From Schizochytrium sp. TIO01 (lineage: Eukaryota > Protista > Bigyra: Labyrinthulomycetes), in the NCBI GenBank assembly GCA_004764695.1, contig SMSO01000034.1, forward strand, positions 310,001-374,000: a DNA stretch of 64,000 nt. Direction: 5' to 3'. The notes beneath the pieces are model-generated. The model saw only the letters and a list, made by a program, of their open reading frames with translations, did not search any database and was not told where the DNA came from. Positions 41,299 through 47,417 of the stretch are shown piece after piece. The translations under genes were made by a program, and so were the position numbers. How positions within the stretch are numbered: position 1 is the first letter of the stretch; every line of letters begins with the position of its first letter.

Positions 41299-42450
41299 TA
41301 CCTGCCCAAGGCAGAACGACTATTTTTATTTTTATTGTTTTTTTTTTGGGGGAGGGGGGGGGGGGGCATGGTAATGCTTATTCGGCGCTTTAGTTTTGAT
41401 TCCTTCGGCCTTTTAAGCAGAATACGTATATTTCAATCAAATGGAAACAGGTTTATTTTTGTACAAACGAAAGCATATTTCCAAAGGCAATCACCTAGTT
41501 TTGCAATGACGATCATATGATAACAACCATGCTACATCACTTTATTGCCCACGAACGAAGTTCCAAGGTAGCGCGCGCTTCCAAAATGATTCATTCTACT
41601 GCAACCAATTTATTTATTTTATTAGTATCATTGTGAGCGAAAATAAATTCAAATTTAATCAGTTCCATATTAAATTAGACAAAAGAAGTCAAGAAATTTG
41701 AACGCGAATCTTGGTTTTTAATCAATCTGCAATGACGCCGTTATAATGCCTTTAAAACTTGGATGCTAGATTACCTGTCGTTTAAACGAGGCAGCTACGT
41801 TTCTAAATTTGTGCGATTCCGAGGGTCATAAAAATGTTGGTCATTCTTTGGAATCCTCTGACATCTTTGTCTCAGTTGATAAACAAATGCATCATAGAAT
41901 CACTGCCAGAATCAACGATAGCAAACAAGCCACTAGCTGGACACTAAGAGCCGCGGTGATCTATATTGCGGATGACAATTTTTTCAGTAAACCAGAATTG
42001 TGCATGCTACTCTATTTCAGAATCCACCAAGATATCATAATGACACCAAACACAAAACCAAGGAAACAGGAAAAATAAAAGGTTCACGTATTTGGAAGGT
42101 TGCAATTGGTGCAAGATGTTTCTAAGGAAAGCATTTTCAAATACAAATAACCTTAGGTATAAACAACGCCATCATTTTTATTTTTTTATTTCTGCATCGA
42201 GTCAATTTATAAAAAAGGATGAAACTAGTTAGAACGCAAGTTACGTTGGAAGTTGCATGCCGTACTCAGTGATGCCAAACTGCTTTTTATCAATTCATAT
42301 GTCCTGCATAGCCTAGGGGTTCATTCCATAACATTTGTACATACAGGTCAAACCTTTTAATTTCTAGTTCAAATGCAAATTTCGAAACTTTTCTAAAGTG
42401 GATGAATATTAAACTTGAAGAATGCTTGAATCGCACTACTTTCTTAGTAT

Positions 42451-44982
42451 CTAACGATAGTACTGTTCAGAGGAGTTTCCAGACTCAGATGAAGGAACCC
42501 GTCGCATCGATAAGCGCAGCCTTGGGGCTGTGGAGTGGCTTTCAGACGAAGGAGCTCGCCTCATGGATAATCTCGATGCTATGGAAAGAGTTTTGCTCAT
42601 AGAAATACGAGGTCCAACCGAAAGGCGCTGATATGCTCCTTGAGCATTTATCTTTGCACCTGTCCAAAAAGAGCGACGGCGACTTGCTTGTGCATGCCGA
42701 ATAGCTTGCTCATTAAGGTCCTGTTCTGTAATTCGAAGATCATAAAGAAGACTTCCAATTAATGATGGGATTTGAGTTTCTGGCTTGCGTTTCTCTGCAG
42801 AGCCTGCTTTAATCTCATAGGCCCCAAGATCTAGGAGTAGTGTATTTGGTTGTGGTTCATATGCTTGAACTTTACGGTCCCGCAAAGCAGACACTCCAAG
42901 GTCTTCTTGAGAAAGATGAAGTGAAGAAAATTCTCGATCACACTCCTTGTTTATCCACTTCAAAGCCCCAGCCCAAGCCGCATTTCGAGCTTTGGCTGGG
43001 TCGCAATGCACGTGGTAGTCAAGATCAAGGTGGTTTTCCCTAGCTAGAGTTGCAAGTTCAGTGTACAGACGCGATCCCAGTCCCCGGATTTTTGCGCCAC
43101 CACCAACAACTTGTATATTTGCAGCAAGTGAGCTGTGAGTGTCTTCTTCACATAACAGGATGCATTCATGAATACACTCTGCCAGTCCTACACCGCCCAT
43201 TGACCTGCTCATGAATAAAGGCTCGAATACTGATGTTCGTTCGTCCCCTTCCAAACGTACGAAGCGTCCATTTGGCAATGTGAAGTTGGCTGTCTTGCCA
43301 TCATCTGCAGTTTCCACTGACTCAACAAAGCATAAATGCTCCTTGATTTCCTGTACAAGGACCCAATCGCTTGCTGCATCAAGGAAAGCTTGGTCATCAG
43401 AATCAGCGAGAAAATCTTGTAAGTCTTCGTTTGCCTGATGACCGCCCCAAGTTATGATTCGAAAGCCCTCAGGAATAATATGACCATTAACAACCGGAGT
43501 CACCCGAAGTGATGAATGACCGAGGTCAATCACCACAGCATTTGTTCTGCCCTTTTCCAAGGCCACCATCTCAGGCATGCTTACAAGTGTGACTGAGGCC
43601 GCCTGGAAATGCTCGAGAAGAATTCGCGTCACTACAGCATCCATTCGATTTGTTAATGGTGCCTGATGAAGAACAACCATGTTGTGCTCTGTGGGGTCAA
43701 TGTTCAATTCATCGGTAAATATCCAGTCTAATAAGGTTTCCATATCTGGGATCAACATGTCTTCATCCAGTTGACGGAAAATGCTATCAAAAAGCAAAGG
43801 GTTACGCAGGTCCATCAGTGCCCTTGTGTTAGTTAGAACATCACGGAGTCCAGGTTTATACGGTGGGGTGTACCGAGAGTCAACGTTCGCCCAAATCATT
43901 CGTTGCAATGCCGTGGAGGCGTTTGCATCTCCTTGCATGAACTCTTCTCGCGGGATCCACAGCAACTTAGTAAACGCTGCCAAGCTTGCAAGAATTGAGC
44001 CTCCTACCCACGTGGACCATTGGCCGTCGGGAGTTGCGCGAACACAATGTCTTGGAAGCCACGATGTCTCCTTCAGCTCCATGTCAAGGCGATCTACAAA
44101 TCCAGGAATTCTAGATGGGGAACCCATCACATATATTTTCTGCGCGAGGTCAGTTTGGCTGAGCACAGGGCACTTGGACAACGACTCCAAAACTAGCTCT
44201 GCGAGACCTGGAACTTGAATCTCAGCAAGGCCTGGATGAAACACCAATGCACACGCTTGTTCAAGGCTGCTATTGCTTAAAAGAACCTCCTCGCTACTGC
44301 CATCAAGAAGTTCCACGACCCTTGGTGTTGGCGCAATTGCACTCAAAGCAGTGATGTCATCACCCGAGATGCGGCCGTGCTGTAACAATGCCTGGTGTGC
44401 TATCTCTAAACTCGTAACACTCTCCTGGGAAAGAAATGTTAAGTAGCTCGCTGCGTCACGAAAACCAATTTCCGCGCGAACGATACCTTCGGGAAGCGGG
44501 ATACCATCATACACAGGAAAGACCGTTGTATAGCTCTCGTCAATATGCACAGTTAAAACATCATTAGAGTTGAGCTCGTACGTGAGCATTTCAGTAGGGT
44601 AACAAGAAATCGAAGGTACCTCACGTGTCATGAACAGGGTTTGAACAAGCCTGTGTCGTTGCTCCCGAGGGGTCAGAGCGCTCAGCGAAAGTAGAACCGC
44701 ATGTTCTTGACCCAGGATATCAAGTTCTGTGTATACGTGTTCTAGGACTGCATCCATAGCCTGCCAGTCCTCCACAATCCCACGCTTCTGCACCCACTGA
44801 ATAGCTAGACCAGACTTGAGAGCTGCACTGCCTACGAGGCTATCAGCGCCATTTTTCGCTACCACGTTTGCAAAAGAAAGCCTTGGCACATCTTCGCCCG
44901 CAAATCCCGCTTGTACCTCAAAGTCGCCAAGGTGAAGCACTAGTACTGCTTTGTCGTCATCCGCAGGATCTCCTATTGTCAT
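42451..44982 (-). CDS. Actin-related protein with two actin folds (843 aa)
   Basis: Fold 1: QAGFAGEDVPR..RGIVEDW..PVYDG..TWVGGSILASL. Fold 2: DMETLLDWIF..GRTNAVVIDLG..EIKEHLCFV..FTLPNG..EPLF..VVGGGAKIRGLGSRL..AAWAGA. Confidence 0.9.
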   Translation of the reverse strand: MTIGDPADDDKAVLVLHLGDFEVQAGFAGEDVPRLSFANVVAKNGADSLVGSAALKSGLAIQWVQKRGIVEDWQAMDAVLEHVYTELDILGQEHAVLLSLSALTPREQRHRLVQTLFMTREVPSISCYPTEMLTYELNSNDVLTVHIDESYTTVFPVYDGIPLPEGIVRAEIGFRDAASYLTFLSQESVTSLEIAHQALLQHGRISGDDITALSAIAPTPRVVELLDGSSEEVLLSNSSLEQACALVFHPGLAEIQVPGLAELVLESLSKCPVLSQTDLAQKIYVMGSPSRIPGFVDRLDMELKETSWLPRHCVRATPDGQWSTWVGGSILASLAAFTKLLWIPREEFMQGDANASTALQRMIWANVDSRYTPPYKPGLRDVLTNTRALMDLRNPLLFDSIFRQLDEDMLIPDMETLLDWIFTDELNIDPTEHNMVVLHQAPLTNRMDAVVTRILLEHFQAASVTLVSMPEMVALEKGRTNAVVIDLGHSSLRVTPVVNGHIIPEGFRIITWGGHQANEDLQDFLADSDDQAFLDAASDWVLVQEIKEHLCFVESVETADDGKTANFTLPNGRFVRLEGDERTSVFEPLFMSRSMGGVGLAECIHECILLCEEDTHSSLAANIQVVGGGAKIRGLGSRLYTELATLARENHLDLDYHVHCDPAKARNAAWAGALKWINKECDREFSSLHLSQEDLGVSALRDRKVQAYEPQPNTLLLDLGAYEIKAGSAEKRKPETQIPSLIGSLLYDLRITEQDLNEQAIRHAQASRRRSFWTGAKINAQGAYQRLSVGPRISMSKTLSIASRLSMRRAPSSESHSTAPRLRLSMRRVPSSESGNSSEQYYR

Positions 44983-47417
44983 TCTGAACTAGGTTTTGCC
45001 CTTTCCTTGACACCGAAGACCACCCTCCCTGAAAGGCAACCAGGCCTGAACGCCCTGGCGCGCCTTCTTCCTCGTCAGTTGTCTCTAAGGTACGATCTTA
45101 AGCCTTTCCTCACGCCAGCTACGGGTTCGCGGCAAGCGGCCACGCGGGCCAATCCGTGTCACGAGTTCGGGCTTTGCAAGCCTCTCCAATACTTGAACGA
45201 TCATTCTACGCACAAGACGGCGTAAATTGCGTGCTAGCTACCTGAAAGTCATTTCTACCCCAAAACTAGATTAGTCTTGGTTATTCAACATTGCTGTTTT
45301 TTGGAAAGCTTAAAGCGAATGAGCACTTTGGCTTTGCCAATGCATATTGCCGTGGAGGGGGTGGCATCGCCTCCATCAGCCAGATCAATTACGCCGCGCG
45401 ACTGTCATTGGATCGTGGAAAAGCTCTTGATTTGTGCAGCAAGACCATGGATCAGCGCTGTTTAGTGTCAGGGTCTCACTACTACTGTTTTCAATAGCAG
45501 GTTTCTACAAGGTGCACGCGCTGCTTCGCGAGCCCGGAAACTCAGATGTTTGTTTGGGTGGGCTGCGAATACCTGGTGCCTGCTTGCTACATATCTGTCG
45601 GTCAAGGGCCTCGTCGGCAGCGCGGGTTGCTAGAAGCTATTTAGCAGGTCTGGTCCGCCGCCTGCAGAAACAGCCGGACCCGGACAACTCGCCATCCCTT
45701 CTTTTAGGCCTGCAGTGTTCGATTGAGTCAGACGAGTGCACACCCTGCGCGAGTGAAAACCGTGCACAATTCAACGTTGACTATGATTACCATATATTAT
45801 TTAGCTATTTATGTAAATAAAGCGACAGTCCCAGTTGCAGCCTTCTAGGGGTAGGCACAATGATTGAGTTTCGTCTTCAATCTGTATTCTTTATACAAAG
45901 CGAGTGACTGTTTTAGCTTGATTTGTACCTAAGTTTGAAGATTTTAACTCGGTTTCAGAGCGAGTGCTGTTTAAATCATGATAATACACCTAGTTAAAAA
46001 GAATTAACATATGTATATATATATGTGTGGGTAACCAAAACTTTGCATTAATAAAAAGAGTAAAAGTACTTTAATATTAATATTAAAATTAATCTAACAC
46101 AAACCAACAACCAAAAAACGTAAACTAGACAATCAACATCAATCTGTGCAAGAGGCCTGCCATGGTAAGCCCGTTGTCTCAATTCGCCTGCGTGGAGTAC
46201 AATACTCGTCGGCGCCACATGCATTTGCCAGGGTCGCTGATCTCGCTTGTGAGCAAATCTGGAATGAGCGATGCAAATCTATCCATAAATGTGGGTTTGA
46301 GGTACCTACGTAATGCAGAGGTACTGCGAGGACATCGGAAGGGACATCTTGACGATGATTGTTGATCGAATTGCGGAGGGCTCGCGAGCTTCGAATTCCT
46401 GATGTTTCAGTCACTGCTGTGGCATCGCTCGCATTGCAAACCCGCGCTCTTGGCCAACGCAAATAAATATCAACCTGCCAACCAAAGACGAGGAGCCTGG
46501 GGACAAGAAGTCCAGCTCTGTGGCACAAGCCCAGTTTTGGTATCAGAGTTGTGAACTGGCGCTCTTTCGAGCGAGCAACCGGAGAGAGGGAGCAAAGCTT
46601 TCATGGGCACGGCGCCGTACTAGCTGCGACTCTGCTCTTTCATGGAAGCGTCAATCGATCACTTTCCCTGAGAATCCCCAGGCCGTGGGTGCGTCTGCAC
46701 AGAGCTCTAGTCGCCCCTCGAATCAAGGTACAACCTGTTTGGTATAAGTCCTTCGCGAGAGGCTGGACCCAGCCCCGTGCTTCAATGATCTTCTTCATCT
46801 CCTGCTGCCTGGGCACCAGTTCTTCCCTCTGCTCGTGACCTGCTCGTCGCAGCACTATGCATTCCCTCGCTATTATTGCCTCGCGGCTTTTCAGAGTGCC
46901 AATCGGATTGATCGACCTTGCCCCGTGTCTCGCCATTGGAGACTTGGCACACGCAACTCTGAGCATCAACTTATCACGTCTCAAAGCAAAGCCGAGTCAG
47001 GCAAATCAAAGGTTTCGCCACTACGTCAAGGCGAGCTAGAGCAGAGACTTTCATAATGATTTATTCGATGCTGCTGCGACCTTAGATATTTCTTCTTCGC
47101 GAGAACATTGCTGCGTCGAAGCCAAGCCAAGCCCATCTCACCGTGCATGGACTCTGGCCGGTTTTCCCAAGAAGAACAGCCCCTTGCTTCGAAACGCAAG
47201 TATAAAATGATAGAATACTAGATTTAGTTGGTGCCTGCTGTCGTTCTTTGTACAGGTTCGCTGCACCTCGCCTTTTGCACTTGAACAGGGCTTGCTCGAG
47301 CTGAGCAGAATCAGCACCTGTCTCCGAACAAGCGTATCTTTCGTTTGCCTCACAGGGCTAGAGCATGCCATGTCTCTGCGACACTAGAATTTGAGAAAAA
47401 GAATCGCGTGCAGGGAA

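What the first reader, a model, noticed from the sequence alone, without database searches (positions are those of the whole stretch)
42748..43845. Second actin fold appears circularly permuted
Fold 2 starts at the equivalent of actin residue ~55-60 (TRALMDLRNPL ~ KRGILTLKYPI; PDMETLLDWIFTDELNIDPTEH ~ [22 protein letters not shown]) and runs to the actin C-terminal motif (AAWAGA). The missing actin N-terminal segment, with the phosphate-1 loop, comes AFTER it: NTLLLDLGAYEIKAGSAEKRKPETQIPSLIG (aa ~713-743, nt ~42846-42754) ~ [30 protein letters not shown]. Actin's N- and C-termini both lie in subdomain 1, so they could be linked, and the new break falls at the subdomain-2 D-loop, so the permutation is structurally plausible. 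I know of no natural circularly permuted actin. The result would be a covalent actin pseudo-dimer joined through the D-loop position, possibly a single-chain nucleator (Arp2/3-like) or a capper.
Basis: partly seen in the sequence, partly recalled or inferred. Interest (0 to 1): 0.85.

Follow-up and report, generated by a model that had tools for sequence, protein, structure and literature searches.

The report
Tandem actin protein, second fold permuted
One expressed, intron-free gene of a thraustochytrid-like protist encodes two actin folds in one chain. The second fold lacks its first three core strands and appears to get them back from a segment placed after its own C-terminus, which would be a natural circular permutation of actin and has not been described in the literature I could search.

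Summary
The 843-aa ORF (window 42451-44982, minus strand) gives actin matches in the order [actin 2-366], [actin ~52-375], [actin 6-~38]. The last match is weak (Pfam 17.7 bits, E 1.4e-3), but it beats all 2000 shuffles (14.7 vs at most 6.5 bits).

- **Gene model:** it is real. Transcript-sized contigs from four studies cover 42181-45232 collinearly with no joints. A second assembly encodes the same 843-aa protein.
- **AlphaFold2:** with an alignment, it folds aa 361-800 as actin (Z 29 to actin 52-374). The relocated hairpin gets pLDDT 82-85.
- **ESMFold2 split-chain test:** it docks the tail onto the fold-2 core with ipSAE 0.76, against 0.05 for the best control. The contacts are actin's native ones: strand 1 on strand 4, and the P1 loop facing the P2 loop.
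- **Nucleotide-site residues:** the tail plus fold 2 keep D11, G13, K18, D154, G156, K213, E214 and G301-302. Fold 1 has lost nearly all of them.
- **Relative:** a Hondaea protein shares the truncated start of fold 2, but its C-terminus is unknown.

The permutation is well supported by prediction but not proven. I saw no coordinates, found no ortholog that keeps the tail, and could not separate packing in cis from packing in trans. The nucleator or capper function is untested.

The parts
42181..45232 (-). Unspliced mRNA that carries the whole ORF
   Evidence: Contigs of 2.7-3.1 kb from four runs in four studies end within ~50-300 nt of the ORF ends, with no joints or indels. The runs are only guessed to be RNA, but the contig ends at the gene borders argue for transcripts.
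42451..44982 (-). ORF of 843 aa (stop included): a two-fold actin-like protein
   Evidence: Pfam Actin 274.8 bits. The same protein (839/843 identical) occurs in another assembly.
43897..44964 (-). Fold 1 (aa 7-362): complete actin fold in normal order, with a shortened D-loop and a degenerate nucleotide site
   Evidence: HMM 2-366. PDB actins at E 6e-38. D11H, S14D, G15F, K18Q, Q137T, D154H, G156D, D157E, K213L, E214L, G302S.
43855..43896 (-). Linker (aa 363-376) from the C-terminus of fold 1 into fold 2, at the position of the second half of the D-loop
   Evidence: pLDDT 27-47 and no strands in the AF2 model. Fold 2 aligns to actin from residue 52 at aa 377. The junction is collinear with the Hondaea relative.
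42865..43854 (-). Fold 2 core (aa 377-706) = actin residues ~52-375; lacks strands 1-3 and the P1 loop
   Evidence: pLDDT is mostly above 90.
43504..43527 (-). Phosphate-2 loop of fold 2 (aa 486-493, DLGHSSLR)
   Evidence: Aligned to actin 154-161. It touches the relocated P1 loop in the two-chain model. Conserved in Hondaea as DVGHQSTR.
42844..42864 (-). Short join (aa 707-713) from the actin-375 equivalent to the relocated N-terminal segment
   Evidence: alignment. pLDDT below 50 at aa 703-707.
42748..42843 (-). Relocated N-terminal segment (aa 714-745) = actin ~7-38: strands 1, 2, 3 and the 35-38 strand, with the P1 loop DLGAYEIK (aa 718-725)
   Evidence: Pfam profile 5-54. Shuffle test. 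AF2 strands at aa 714-719, 723-728, 736-739 and 742-745, pLDDT 82-85. ESMFold2 contacts with aa 432-438, 488-491, 627-628 and 667-678.
42454..42747 (-). C-terminal tail (aa 746-843): a low-confidence helix (aa 753-772), then a disordered Ser/Arg-rich end with two copies of RLSMRR[AV]PSSES (aa 804-815 and 823-834; nt 42481-42573)
   Evidence: pLDDT 31-61. Sequence read. No family match. No actin remnant lies downstream of the stop codon.

Best explanation
The gene encodes a single-chain pair of divergent actin folds. Fold 1 (aa 7-362) is a complete actin in normal order, but its nucleotide-binding residues are gone and its D-loop is shortened. Fold 2 is a circularly permuted actin. Its core (aa 377-706) covers actin residues ~52-375. 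The three missing central strands of subdomain 1, with the P1 phosphate loop, come from aa 714-745, which follow directly after the actin-C-terminus equivalent of fold 2. The new chain ends sit at the D-loop of subdomain 2.

The likely origin (inferred) is permutation by duplication. A head-to-tail array of three actin repeats lost the first ~50 residues of repeat 2 and all but the first ~40 residues of repeat 3.

The likely consequences (inferred) are these. Fold 2 plus the tail may still bind a nucleotide, because D11, G13, K18, D154, G156, K213, E214 and G301-302 are kept. It probably does not hydrolyse it the way actin does, because Q137 is M and H161 is R. The C-terminus of fold 1 is tied through ~14 residues to the D-loop site of fold 2. 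That is the same neighbourhood that joins consecutive subunits along one F-actin strand (the C374-Q41 cross-link; recalled from the literature). The protein may therefore act as a pre-formed longitudinal actin-like dimer that seeds, caps or decorates filaments, with the RRxS-rich tail as a possible site of phosphoregulation. The confidence given is for the permuted fold. The functional part is speculation, at roughly 0.2.
For: - Shown: the order of actin matches is full / 52-375 / 6-38.
- Shown: the tail match is non-random.
- Shown: the rearranged sequence (tail plus core) matches the actin HMM as one domain, 7-363, at 108 bits.
- Shown: what fold 2 lacks and what the tail offers are complementary, with no overlap and only the D-loop missing.
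- Shown: the mRNA is unspliced and spans everything. A second assembly agrees.
- Predicted: AF2 with a 64-row alignment has mean pLDDT 77 and pTM 0.75. The hairpin aa 711-740 scores 82-85 with actin's strand pattern, while the preceding linker aa 361-376 scores below 50.
- Predicted: ESMFold2 on two chains (aa 377-698 and aa 705-775), without any alignment, scores ipSAE 0.76 in three runs. The best of 3 controls scores 0.05. That mark was reached by 51 of 78 solved complexes and 2 of 108 mismatched pairs. The runs agree in at least 40% of their contacts, and the partner's pLDDT is at least 49.
- Predicted: the lowest-error contacts in that model are aa 714-718 with aa 433-438 (actin strand 1 on strand 4). 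Others are the P1 loop with the P2 loop aa 488-491 and GG 627-628, and with helices aa 417-428 and 667-678.
- Nucleotide-site residues are kept together in the tail and fold 2 but lost in fold 1.
- The N-truncated start of fold 2 and the junction are collinear with a Hondaea fermentalgiana protein (29% identity over 563 columns, E 2e-53). A core that lacks its central strand has therefore been kept across genera, which argues that something complements it.
Against: - No ortholog with a conserved tail was found. The only relative's gene model leaves the actin fold after aa ~1038, so conservation of the relocated segment is untested.
- Both structure predictors know actin well and may place an actin-like hairpin from memory. 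The tool itself warns of this.
- No model coordinates were available. Packing in the AF2 model is inferred from pLDDT only.
- The two-chain test cannot tell packing in cis from packing in trans.
- The P1 loop has A-Y in place of S14-G15.
- The Pfam score of the tail is below the family cut-off.
Confidence: 0.65

Rival explanations
1. Vestigial third repeat. aa 707-745 is only the decaying stump of a third actin repeat. It stays unpacked, and fold 2 is a degenerate or partly unfolded domain, or one stabilised in some other way.
For: The segment abuts fold 2 exactly as the next repeat of a tandem array would. Its Pfam score is sub-threshold. The rest of the tail is disordered. No ortholog shows conservation.
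Against: Strand 1 is the central strand of the subdomain-1 sheet, so a core without it is unlikely to persist with a conserved P2 loop across genera. Two predictors pack the segment in the native place. It keeps D11, G13 and K18, whereas the complete fold 1 lost them. No other part of a third repeat survives, inside or beyond the ORF. That pattern fits selective retention of just this piece.
Confidence: 0.15
2. Complementation in trans. The hairpin of one molecule fills the gap in fold 2 of another, giving domain-swapped dimers or a head-to-tail polymer rather than a closed permuted domain.
For: The join between the actin-375 equivalent and strand 1 is short, ~7 residues. The positive ESMFold2 test was itself run in trans.
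Against: AF2 closes the domain within one chain and still gives the hairpin pLDDT 82-85. The C-terminal residues of actin are flexible and lie in the same subdomain as the N-terminus (established knowledge).
Confidence: 0.12
3. Artefact. A misassembly, a read-through of two or three genes, or an unrecognised intron creates the apparent order.
For: Nothing beyond the oddity of the architecture.
Against: One open frame of 843 codons. Collinear transcript-sized contigs without joints or indels in four studies. Twenty runs from 11 studies hold the stretch. An independent assembly gives the same 843-aa protein.
Confidence: 0.02

Closest known systems
Conventional actin and actin-related proteins (Pfam PF00022)
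   Same: Both folds are closest to conventional actin. Fold 1 hits PDB actins at E 6e-38 and fold 2 at E 1e-22. The fold-2 model aligns to actin at Z 29.
   Different: There are two folds in one chain. Fold 2 has its first ~38 residues moved behind its C-terminus and has no D-loop. The catalytic Q137 and H161 are absent from both folds. The nucleotide site of fold 1 is destroyed.
'Actin, partial' of Hondaea fermentalgiana (P0002, NCBI)
   Same: It is collinear with aa 14-560 at 29% identity. It has the same short D-loop in fold 1, the same junction, fold 2 starting at actin ~52, the same insertion before the DMExL helix, and a similar P2 loop.
   Different: Its gene model carries a glycosyltransferase-like N-terminus and runs into a COR domain after aa ~1038. 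This is probably a fused or mis-spliced model. The second half of fold 2 and any tail cannot be seen.
Tandem two-actin proteins in the protein library (P0004, P0005, P0006, P0008, P0045)
   Same: They have two actin folds head to tail in one polypeptide, with little or no linker.
   Different: In four of them (P0004, P0005, P0006, P0008) both folds are complete and in normal order. In P0045 each repeat matches my actin HMM only from position ~65, with a weak N-terminal stretch between the repeats, so its completeness is less clear. None shows the order found here. They are only ~25-28% identical to this protein and are not orthologs.
Chemically cross-linked longitudinal actin dimer (residues 41 and 374; PDB 2q31, listed)
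   Same: The C-terminus of one actin unit is tied to the D-loop of the next. Here ~14 encoded residues (aa 363-376) run from the actin-375 equivalent of fold 1 to the actin-52 equivalent of fold 2.
   Different: This is an analogy of geometry only, and rests on recalled knowledge of F-actin. The relative position of the two folds was not modelled here.
Arp2/3 complex
   Same: Two divergent actin-like folds are held together as a possible template.
   Different: Arp2 and Arp3 are separate chains, held in a short-pitch (lateral) arrangement by five other subunits. This genome has ordinary Arp-like genes elsewhere. No test of nucleation was possible.

Membership tests
Actin family (PF00022) | Profile match above Pfam's gathering score | tested here: met
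   274.8 bits for the whole protein against a cut-off of 27. Fold 1 alone scores 152 bits and fold 2 alone 116 bits.
Actin family (PF00022) | Canonical order of the ASKHA motifs: phosphate 1, connect 1, phosphate 2, adenosine, connect 2 | tested here: not met
   Fold 1 has the normal order. In fold 2 the phosphate-1 segment (aa 714-728) comes after the adenosine and connect-2 region (aa 622-678).
Actin family (PF00022) | Intact ATP-binding and hydrolysis residues (D11, S14, G15, K18, Q137, D154, G156, D157, G158, H161, K213, E214, G301, G302) | tested here: not met
   Fold 1 keeps only G13 and G301. Fold 2 plus the tail keeps D11, G13, K18, D154, G156, K213, E214, G301 and G302, but has S14A, G15Y, Q137M, D157H, G158S and H161R.
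Circular permutant of a known fold | All core elements of the parent fold are present, in rotated order | tested here: met
   The core covers actin 52-375 and the tail covers actin 6-38. The rearranged sequence matches the actin HMM as a single domain, 7-363. Only the D-loop, ~39-51, is missing.
Circular permutant of a known fold | The original termini are joined, and the new termini lie at a surface loop | tested here: met
   The actin-375 equivalent (aa ~706) is joined to the actin-7 equivalent (aa 714) by ~7 residues. The new ends lie at aa ~377 and ~745, which flank the D-loop position.
Circular permutant of a known fold | The relocated segment occupies its native place in the three-dimensional structure | tested here: inconclusive
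   Two predictions agree: AF2 pLDDT 82-85 and ESMFold2 ipSAE 0.76 against a best control of 0.05, with native strand 1-strand 4 and P1-P2 contacts. There are no coordinates, no experiment, and memory of actin cannot be excluded.
Circular permutant of a known fold | The arrangement is conserved in orthologs | tested here: inconclusive
   The truncated start of fold 2 is conserved in Hondaea.
Actin filament nucleator or capper (Arp2/3-like, works-like claim) | Binds actin monomers or filament ends and changes polymerisation kinetics | not testable with these tools
   This needs a pyrene-actin or TIRF assay.

The most novel reading that the evidence does not exclude
This is a natural single-chain mimic of two consecutive subunits of one F-actin strand. 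A nucleotide-dead actin fold is fused through its C-terminus into the D-loop site of a circularly permuted second actin fold that may still bind nucleotide. The protein works as a genetically encoded filament seed or end-cap in the actin-based ectoplasmic network of thraustochytrids, switched by phosphorylation of its RRxS tail.
Probability: 0.15. Interest if true: 0.9.

Novelty: new variant of a known kind. Interest (0 to 1): 0.7.

Why it matters
Actin is among the most conserved and topologically invariant eukaryotic proteins. A full-text search of about 8.4 million papers found no mention of a permuted actin, and I know of none from memory.

If the prediction holds, this would be a clean natural example of permutation by duplication caught inside a tandem array. 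It would show that the actin fold tolerates new termini at the D-loop. It would also give protein engineers a template for single-chain or split actins. The covalent link from the C-terminus of one fold to the D-loop site of the next would offer a natural handle on the longitudinal filament contact.

Tried and rejected
- **AF2, single sequence, whole protein:** useless, mean pLDDT 35.
- **The search for homologous proteins, three searches (aa 361-843, aa 685-843, and P0002 aa 484-1040):** each returned only the query's own cluster.
- **Representative search:** apart from the same-species copy (P0001), P0002 was the only ortholog-like hit among the best 150. The other multi-actin hits are two-fold tandems in normal order or apparent fragments, and none has this order.
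- **Metagenome scan with aa 640-800:** 11 'relatives', all false. They are an antisense frame of a bacterial transporter gene that shares the peptide EKRKPETQ.
- **Does the rest of the tail (aa 736-792) derive from actin 305-360 or from actin 52-72?** Weak resemblances only (blastp E 0.56; HMM -2.2 bits). Not significant and left open.
- **Do aa 351-384 supply the missing strands?** Rejected. The region is disordered in AF2 and has no HMM match.
- **Remnants of a third repeat beyond the stop codon:** none in six frames.
- **DNA-level direct repeat behind the two RLSMRRxPSSES motifs:** none found.
- **Literature searches for tandem actins and thraustochytrid actin-like proteins:** nothing relevant.
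- **Earlier scan notes:** none on this gene.
Full report
**The gene.** Window 42451-44982 on the minus strand is one open frame of 843 codons. The genome is eukaryotic: 64 Mb in 37 contigs, with five identical intron-free copies of conventional actin and a set of Arp-like genes. Three things point to a thraustochytrid, probably Aurantiochytrium. The actin is identical to a transcript of MMETSP0958. The only distant relative of the protein studied here is from Hondaea fermentalgiana. This assignment is an inference. Actin is too conserved to prove it, and the taxon number printed in the MMETSP header points to an unrelated fungus.

**Is the gene model real?** Twenty runs from 11 studies hold the stretch. 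I laid four runs that are guessed to be RNA, from four different studies, on window 41800-45600.
- Each gives contigs of 2.7-3.1 kb (one run gives two overlapping pieces).
- The contigs lie between 42181 and 45232 and stop within a few hundred bases of the ORF ends.
- They have no joints and no insertions or deletions, only a handful of shared strain SNPs.
- DNA contigs at these depths would not end at both gene borders in four data sets, so I read these as transcripts of one unspliced mRNA.

An independent assembly in the protein library encodes the same 843-aa protein with four substitutions. Misassembly, gene fusion by read-through and hidden introns are therefore very unlikely.

**The observation.** Pfam Actin matches the protein at 274.8 bits. 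Scanned in pieces, the matches are:

| Part | Residues | Actin profile positions | Source |
|---|---|---|---|
| Fold 1 | aa 9-187 and ~253-350 | 2-189 and 299-397 | |
| Fold 2 | aa 413-676 | 75-381 | |
| Tail | aa 713-762 | 5-54 (17.7 bits, E 1.4e-3, below the cut-off) | |

An HMM that I built from the genome's own actin and Arp genes gives the same order: 7-350 = 2-366, 413-695 = 82-364, and 712-764 = 6-58. In 2000 shuffles of aa 701-800 the best score was 6.5 bits, against 14.7 for the real tail. When the tail (aa 707-746) is placed in front of aa 372-706 in a script, the HMM matches it as a single domain, 7-363, at 108 bits.

The alignment to the genome's actin shows three junctions:
- Fold 1 ends at about aa 362 (LQRM ~ HRKCF).
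- Fold 2 runs to the actin C-terminus equivalent at about aa 706 (RDRKVQ).
- Strand 1 of the next repeat starts at aa 714.

The tail is thus the beginning of a third head-to-tail repeat. Nothing else of that repeat is detectable, either in the rest of the ORF or in six frames downstream of the stop.

**Structure predictions.** A single-sequence AF2 run on the whole protein failed, with pLDDT 35. I then aligned aa 361-800 with 57 single actins and six natural two-actin proteins. MAFFT aligns the first actin of some of the two-actin proteins with fold 2 and the start of their second actin with the tail. Coverage of the tail is only 2-4 rows.

AF2 on this alignment gives mean pLDDT 77 and pTM 0.75:
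- The fold-2 core is mostly above 90.
- aa 361-376 are below 50 and have no strands.
- aa 711-740 score 82-85, with strands at 714-719, 723-728, 736-739 and 742-745. This is the pattern of actin strands 1-3 and the 35-38 strand.
- A helix at aa 753-772 is uncertain, and the remainder is disordered.

The model aligns to actin at Z 29.2, rmsd 2.9 A and 309 residues, with aa 377-705 on actin 52-374. Foldseek agrees. I could not obtain coordinates, so I infer that the hairpin is docked from its confidence alone.

**Split-chain test.** To test docking another way, I split the domain into two chains, aa 377-698 and aa 705-775. ESMFold2 made no use of my alignment.
- It scored ipSAE 0.76 in all three runs. 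The best of three controls scored 0.05.
- The mark was reached by 51 of 78 solved complexes and 2 of 108 mismatched pairs.
- The runs agree in at least 40% of their contacts, and the partner's pLDDT is at least 49.
- The pairs with the lowest expected error are aa 714-718 (TLLLD = actin 7-11) against aa 433-438 (HNMVVL = actin 101-106, strand 4).
- Further contacts run from the P1 loop (aa 719-722) to the P2 loop (aa 488-491) and to G627-G628 (actin 301-302). The hairpin also touches helices aa 417-428 (actin ~85-96) and aa 667-678 (actin 337-348).

This is the native environment of actin's N-terminal strands. It rests on established knowledge of the ASKHA 3-2-1-4-5 sheet and the phosphate clamp. 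The tool warns that families with solved structures can score from memory. The result therefore shows that the two pieces look like a split actin, not that they bind.

**Sequence arguments that do not depend on the predictors.**
1. What fold 2 lacks (actin 1-51) and what the tail provides (actin 6-38) fit together without overlap. Only the D-loop is missing.
2. Residues of the nucleotide site are retained together on both pieces: D718, G720 and K725 (actin D11, G13, K18) in the tail, and D486, G488, K547, E548, G627 and G628 (D154, G156, K213, E214, G301, G302) in the core. The complete fold 1 has lost almost all of them. Q137 and H161, needed for hydrolysis in actin, are M and R in fold 2, and S14-G15 are A-Y. 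Binding is therefore possible, but actin-type hydrolysis is doubtful (inference).
3. The Hondaea protein P0002 is collinear with aa 14-560 at 29% identity (E 2e-53). It has the same junction, fold 2 starting at actin ~52 (QYVGHRAVERRFMLRLSHPI), and a similar P2 loop. A core without its central strand has thus been maintained since these genera split, which is hard to explain unless something fills the gap. The P0002 model leaves the actin fold after aa ~1038 and enters a COR domain (Pfam list), so its tail is unknown.

**How it probably arose and works.** The abutting repeat boundaries point to permutation by duplication. This means three tandem repeats, loss of the first ~50 residues of the second, and loss of all but the first ~40 residues of the third (inferred).

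The new ends of fold 2 lie at the D-loop. Fold 1's C-terminus enters there through ~14 residues (aa 363-376), and the disordered Ser/Arg-rich tail leaves there. In F-actin the C-terminus of one subunit lies next to the D-loop of its neighbour along the strand. Residues 374 and 41 can be cross-linked, and PDB 2q31 appears among the structural matches. The geometry itself is recalled knowledge. A longitudinal, filament-like pose of the two folds is therefore sterically plausible, but I did not model it. Fold 1 keeps the barbed-end cleft helix almost unchanged (WVGGSILASLAAF) but has lost about 11 residues of its own D-loop. A role as a pre-formed actin-like dimer that seeds, caps or decorates filaments is a reasonable guess. 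The two RLSMRR[AV]PSSES motifs look like basophilic-kinase sites. None of this functional part is shown.

**Rivals.**
- A vestigial, unpacked stump (0.15) is disfavoured by the predictions, by the retained P1 residues and by the clean loss of everything else of repeat 3.
- Complementation in trans, giving swapped dimers or polymers (0.12), cannot be excluded. The join is short and the positive test was run in trans. AF2 does close the domain within one chain.
- An artefact (0.02) is excluded as far as reads can exclude it.

**Comparison and novelty.** Both folds belong to the actin family by score, but fold 2 fails the family's motif order. Several other two-actin proteins exist in the library, but none has this order. 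Four of them have two complete folds in normal order. P0045's repeats match my HMM only from position ~65. No paper in the searchable library mentions a permuted actin. I rate this a new variant of a known kind. It is supported by consistent computational evidence and by expression, and it still needs coordinates, orthologs and a bench test.

Noticed in passing
window 42481-42573 (aa 804-834): There are two near-identical peptide motifs, RLSMRRAPSSES and RLSMRRVPSSES, 19 residues apart in the disordered C-terminal tail. They look like RRxS kinase sites. No DNA-level direct repeat was detected.
   Followed up: partly
G000: C36:63614-64732, C31:7107315-7108433, C30:5328134-5329252, C30:1633472-1634590, C8:31573-32691 (L001-L005): Five intron-free copies of conventional actin have identical Pfam scores. 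The protein is identical to a transcript of MMETSP0958.
   Followed up: partly
G000:C30:501145-502419 (L010): An actin fold lies inside an open frame of ~1500 aa, preceded by CH-like and SAM-like sequence. This is another unusual actin fusion in the same genome. An earlier scan note (s1-833179) seems to describe it.
   Followed up: no
P0004, P0005, P0006, P0008, P0045 (protein library): These natural proteins of 680-900 aa carry two actin folds head to tail. They are AT-rich and ciliate-like in composition. They were not named by any source I saw.
   Followed up: partly
P0002 (Hondaea fermentalgiana 'Actin, partial'): The gene model joins a mannosyltransferase-like domain, one and a half actin folds and a COR domain. 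It is probably a fused or mis-spliced prediction that hides the true ortholog.
   Followed up: partly
header of P0151: The MMETSP header gives TAXON_ID=87120, which is a Rhizopogon fungus in NCBI taxonomy. Aurantiochytrium limacinum is 87102. This looks like a digit transposition in the source metadata.
   Followed up: yes
L019-L029: The metagenome 'relatives' returned for the tail are chance matches in the antisense frame of a bacterial MATE-type transporter gene.
   Followed up: yes
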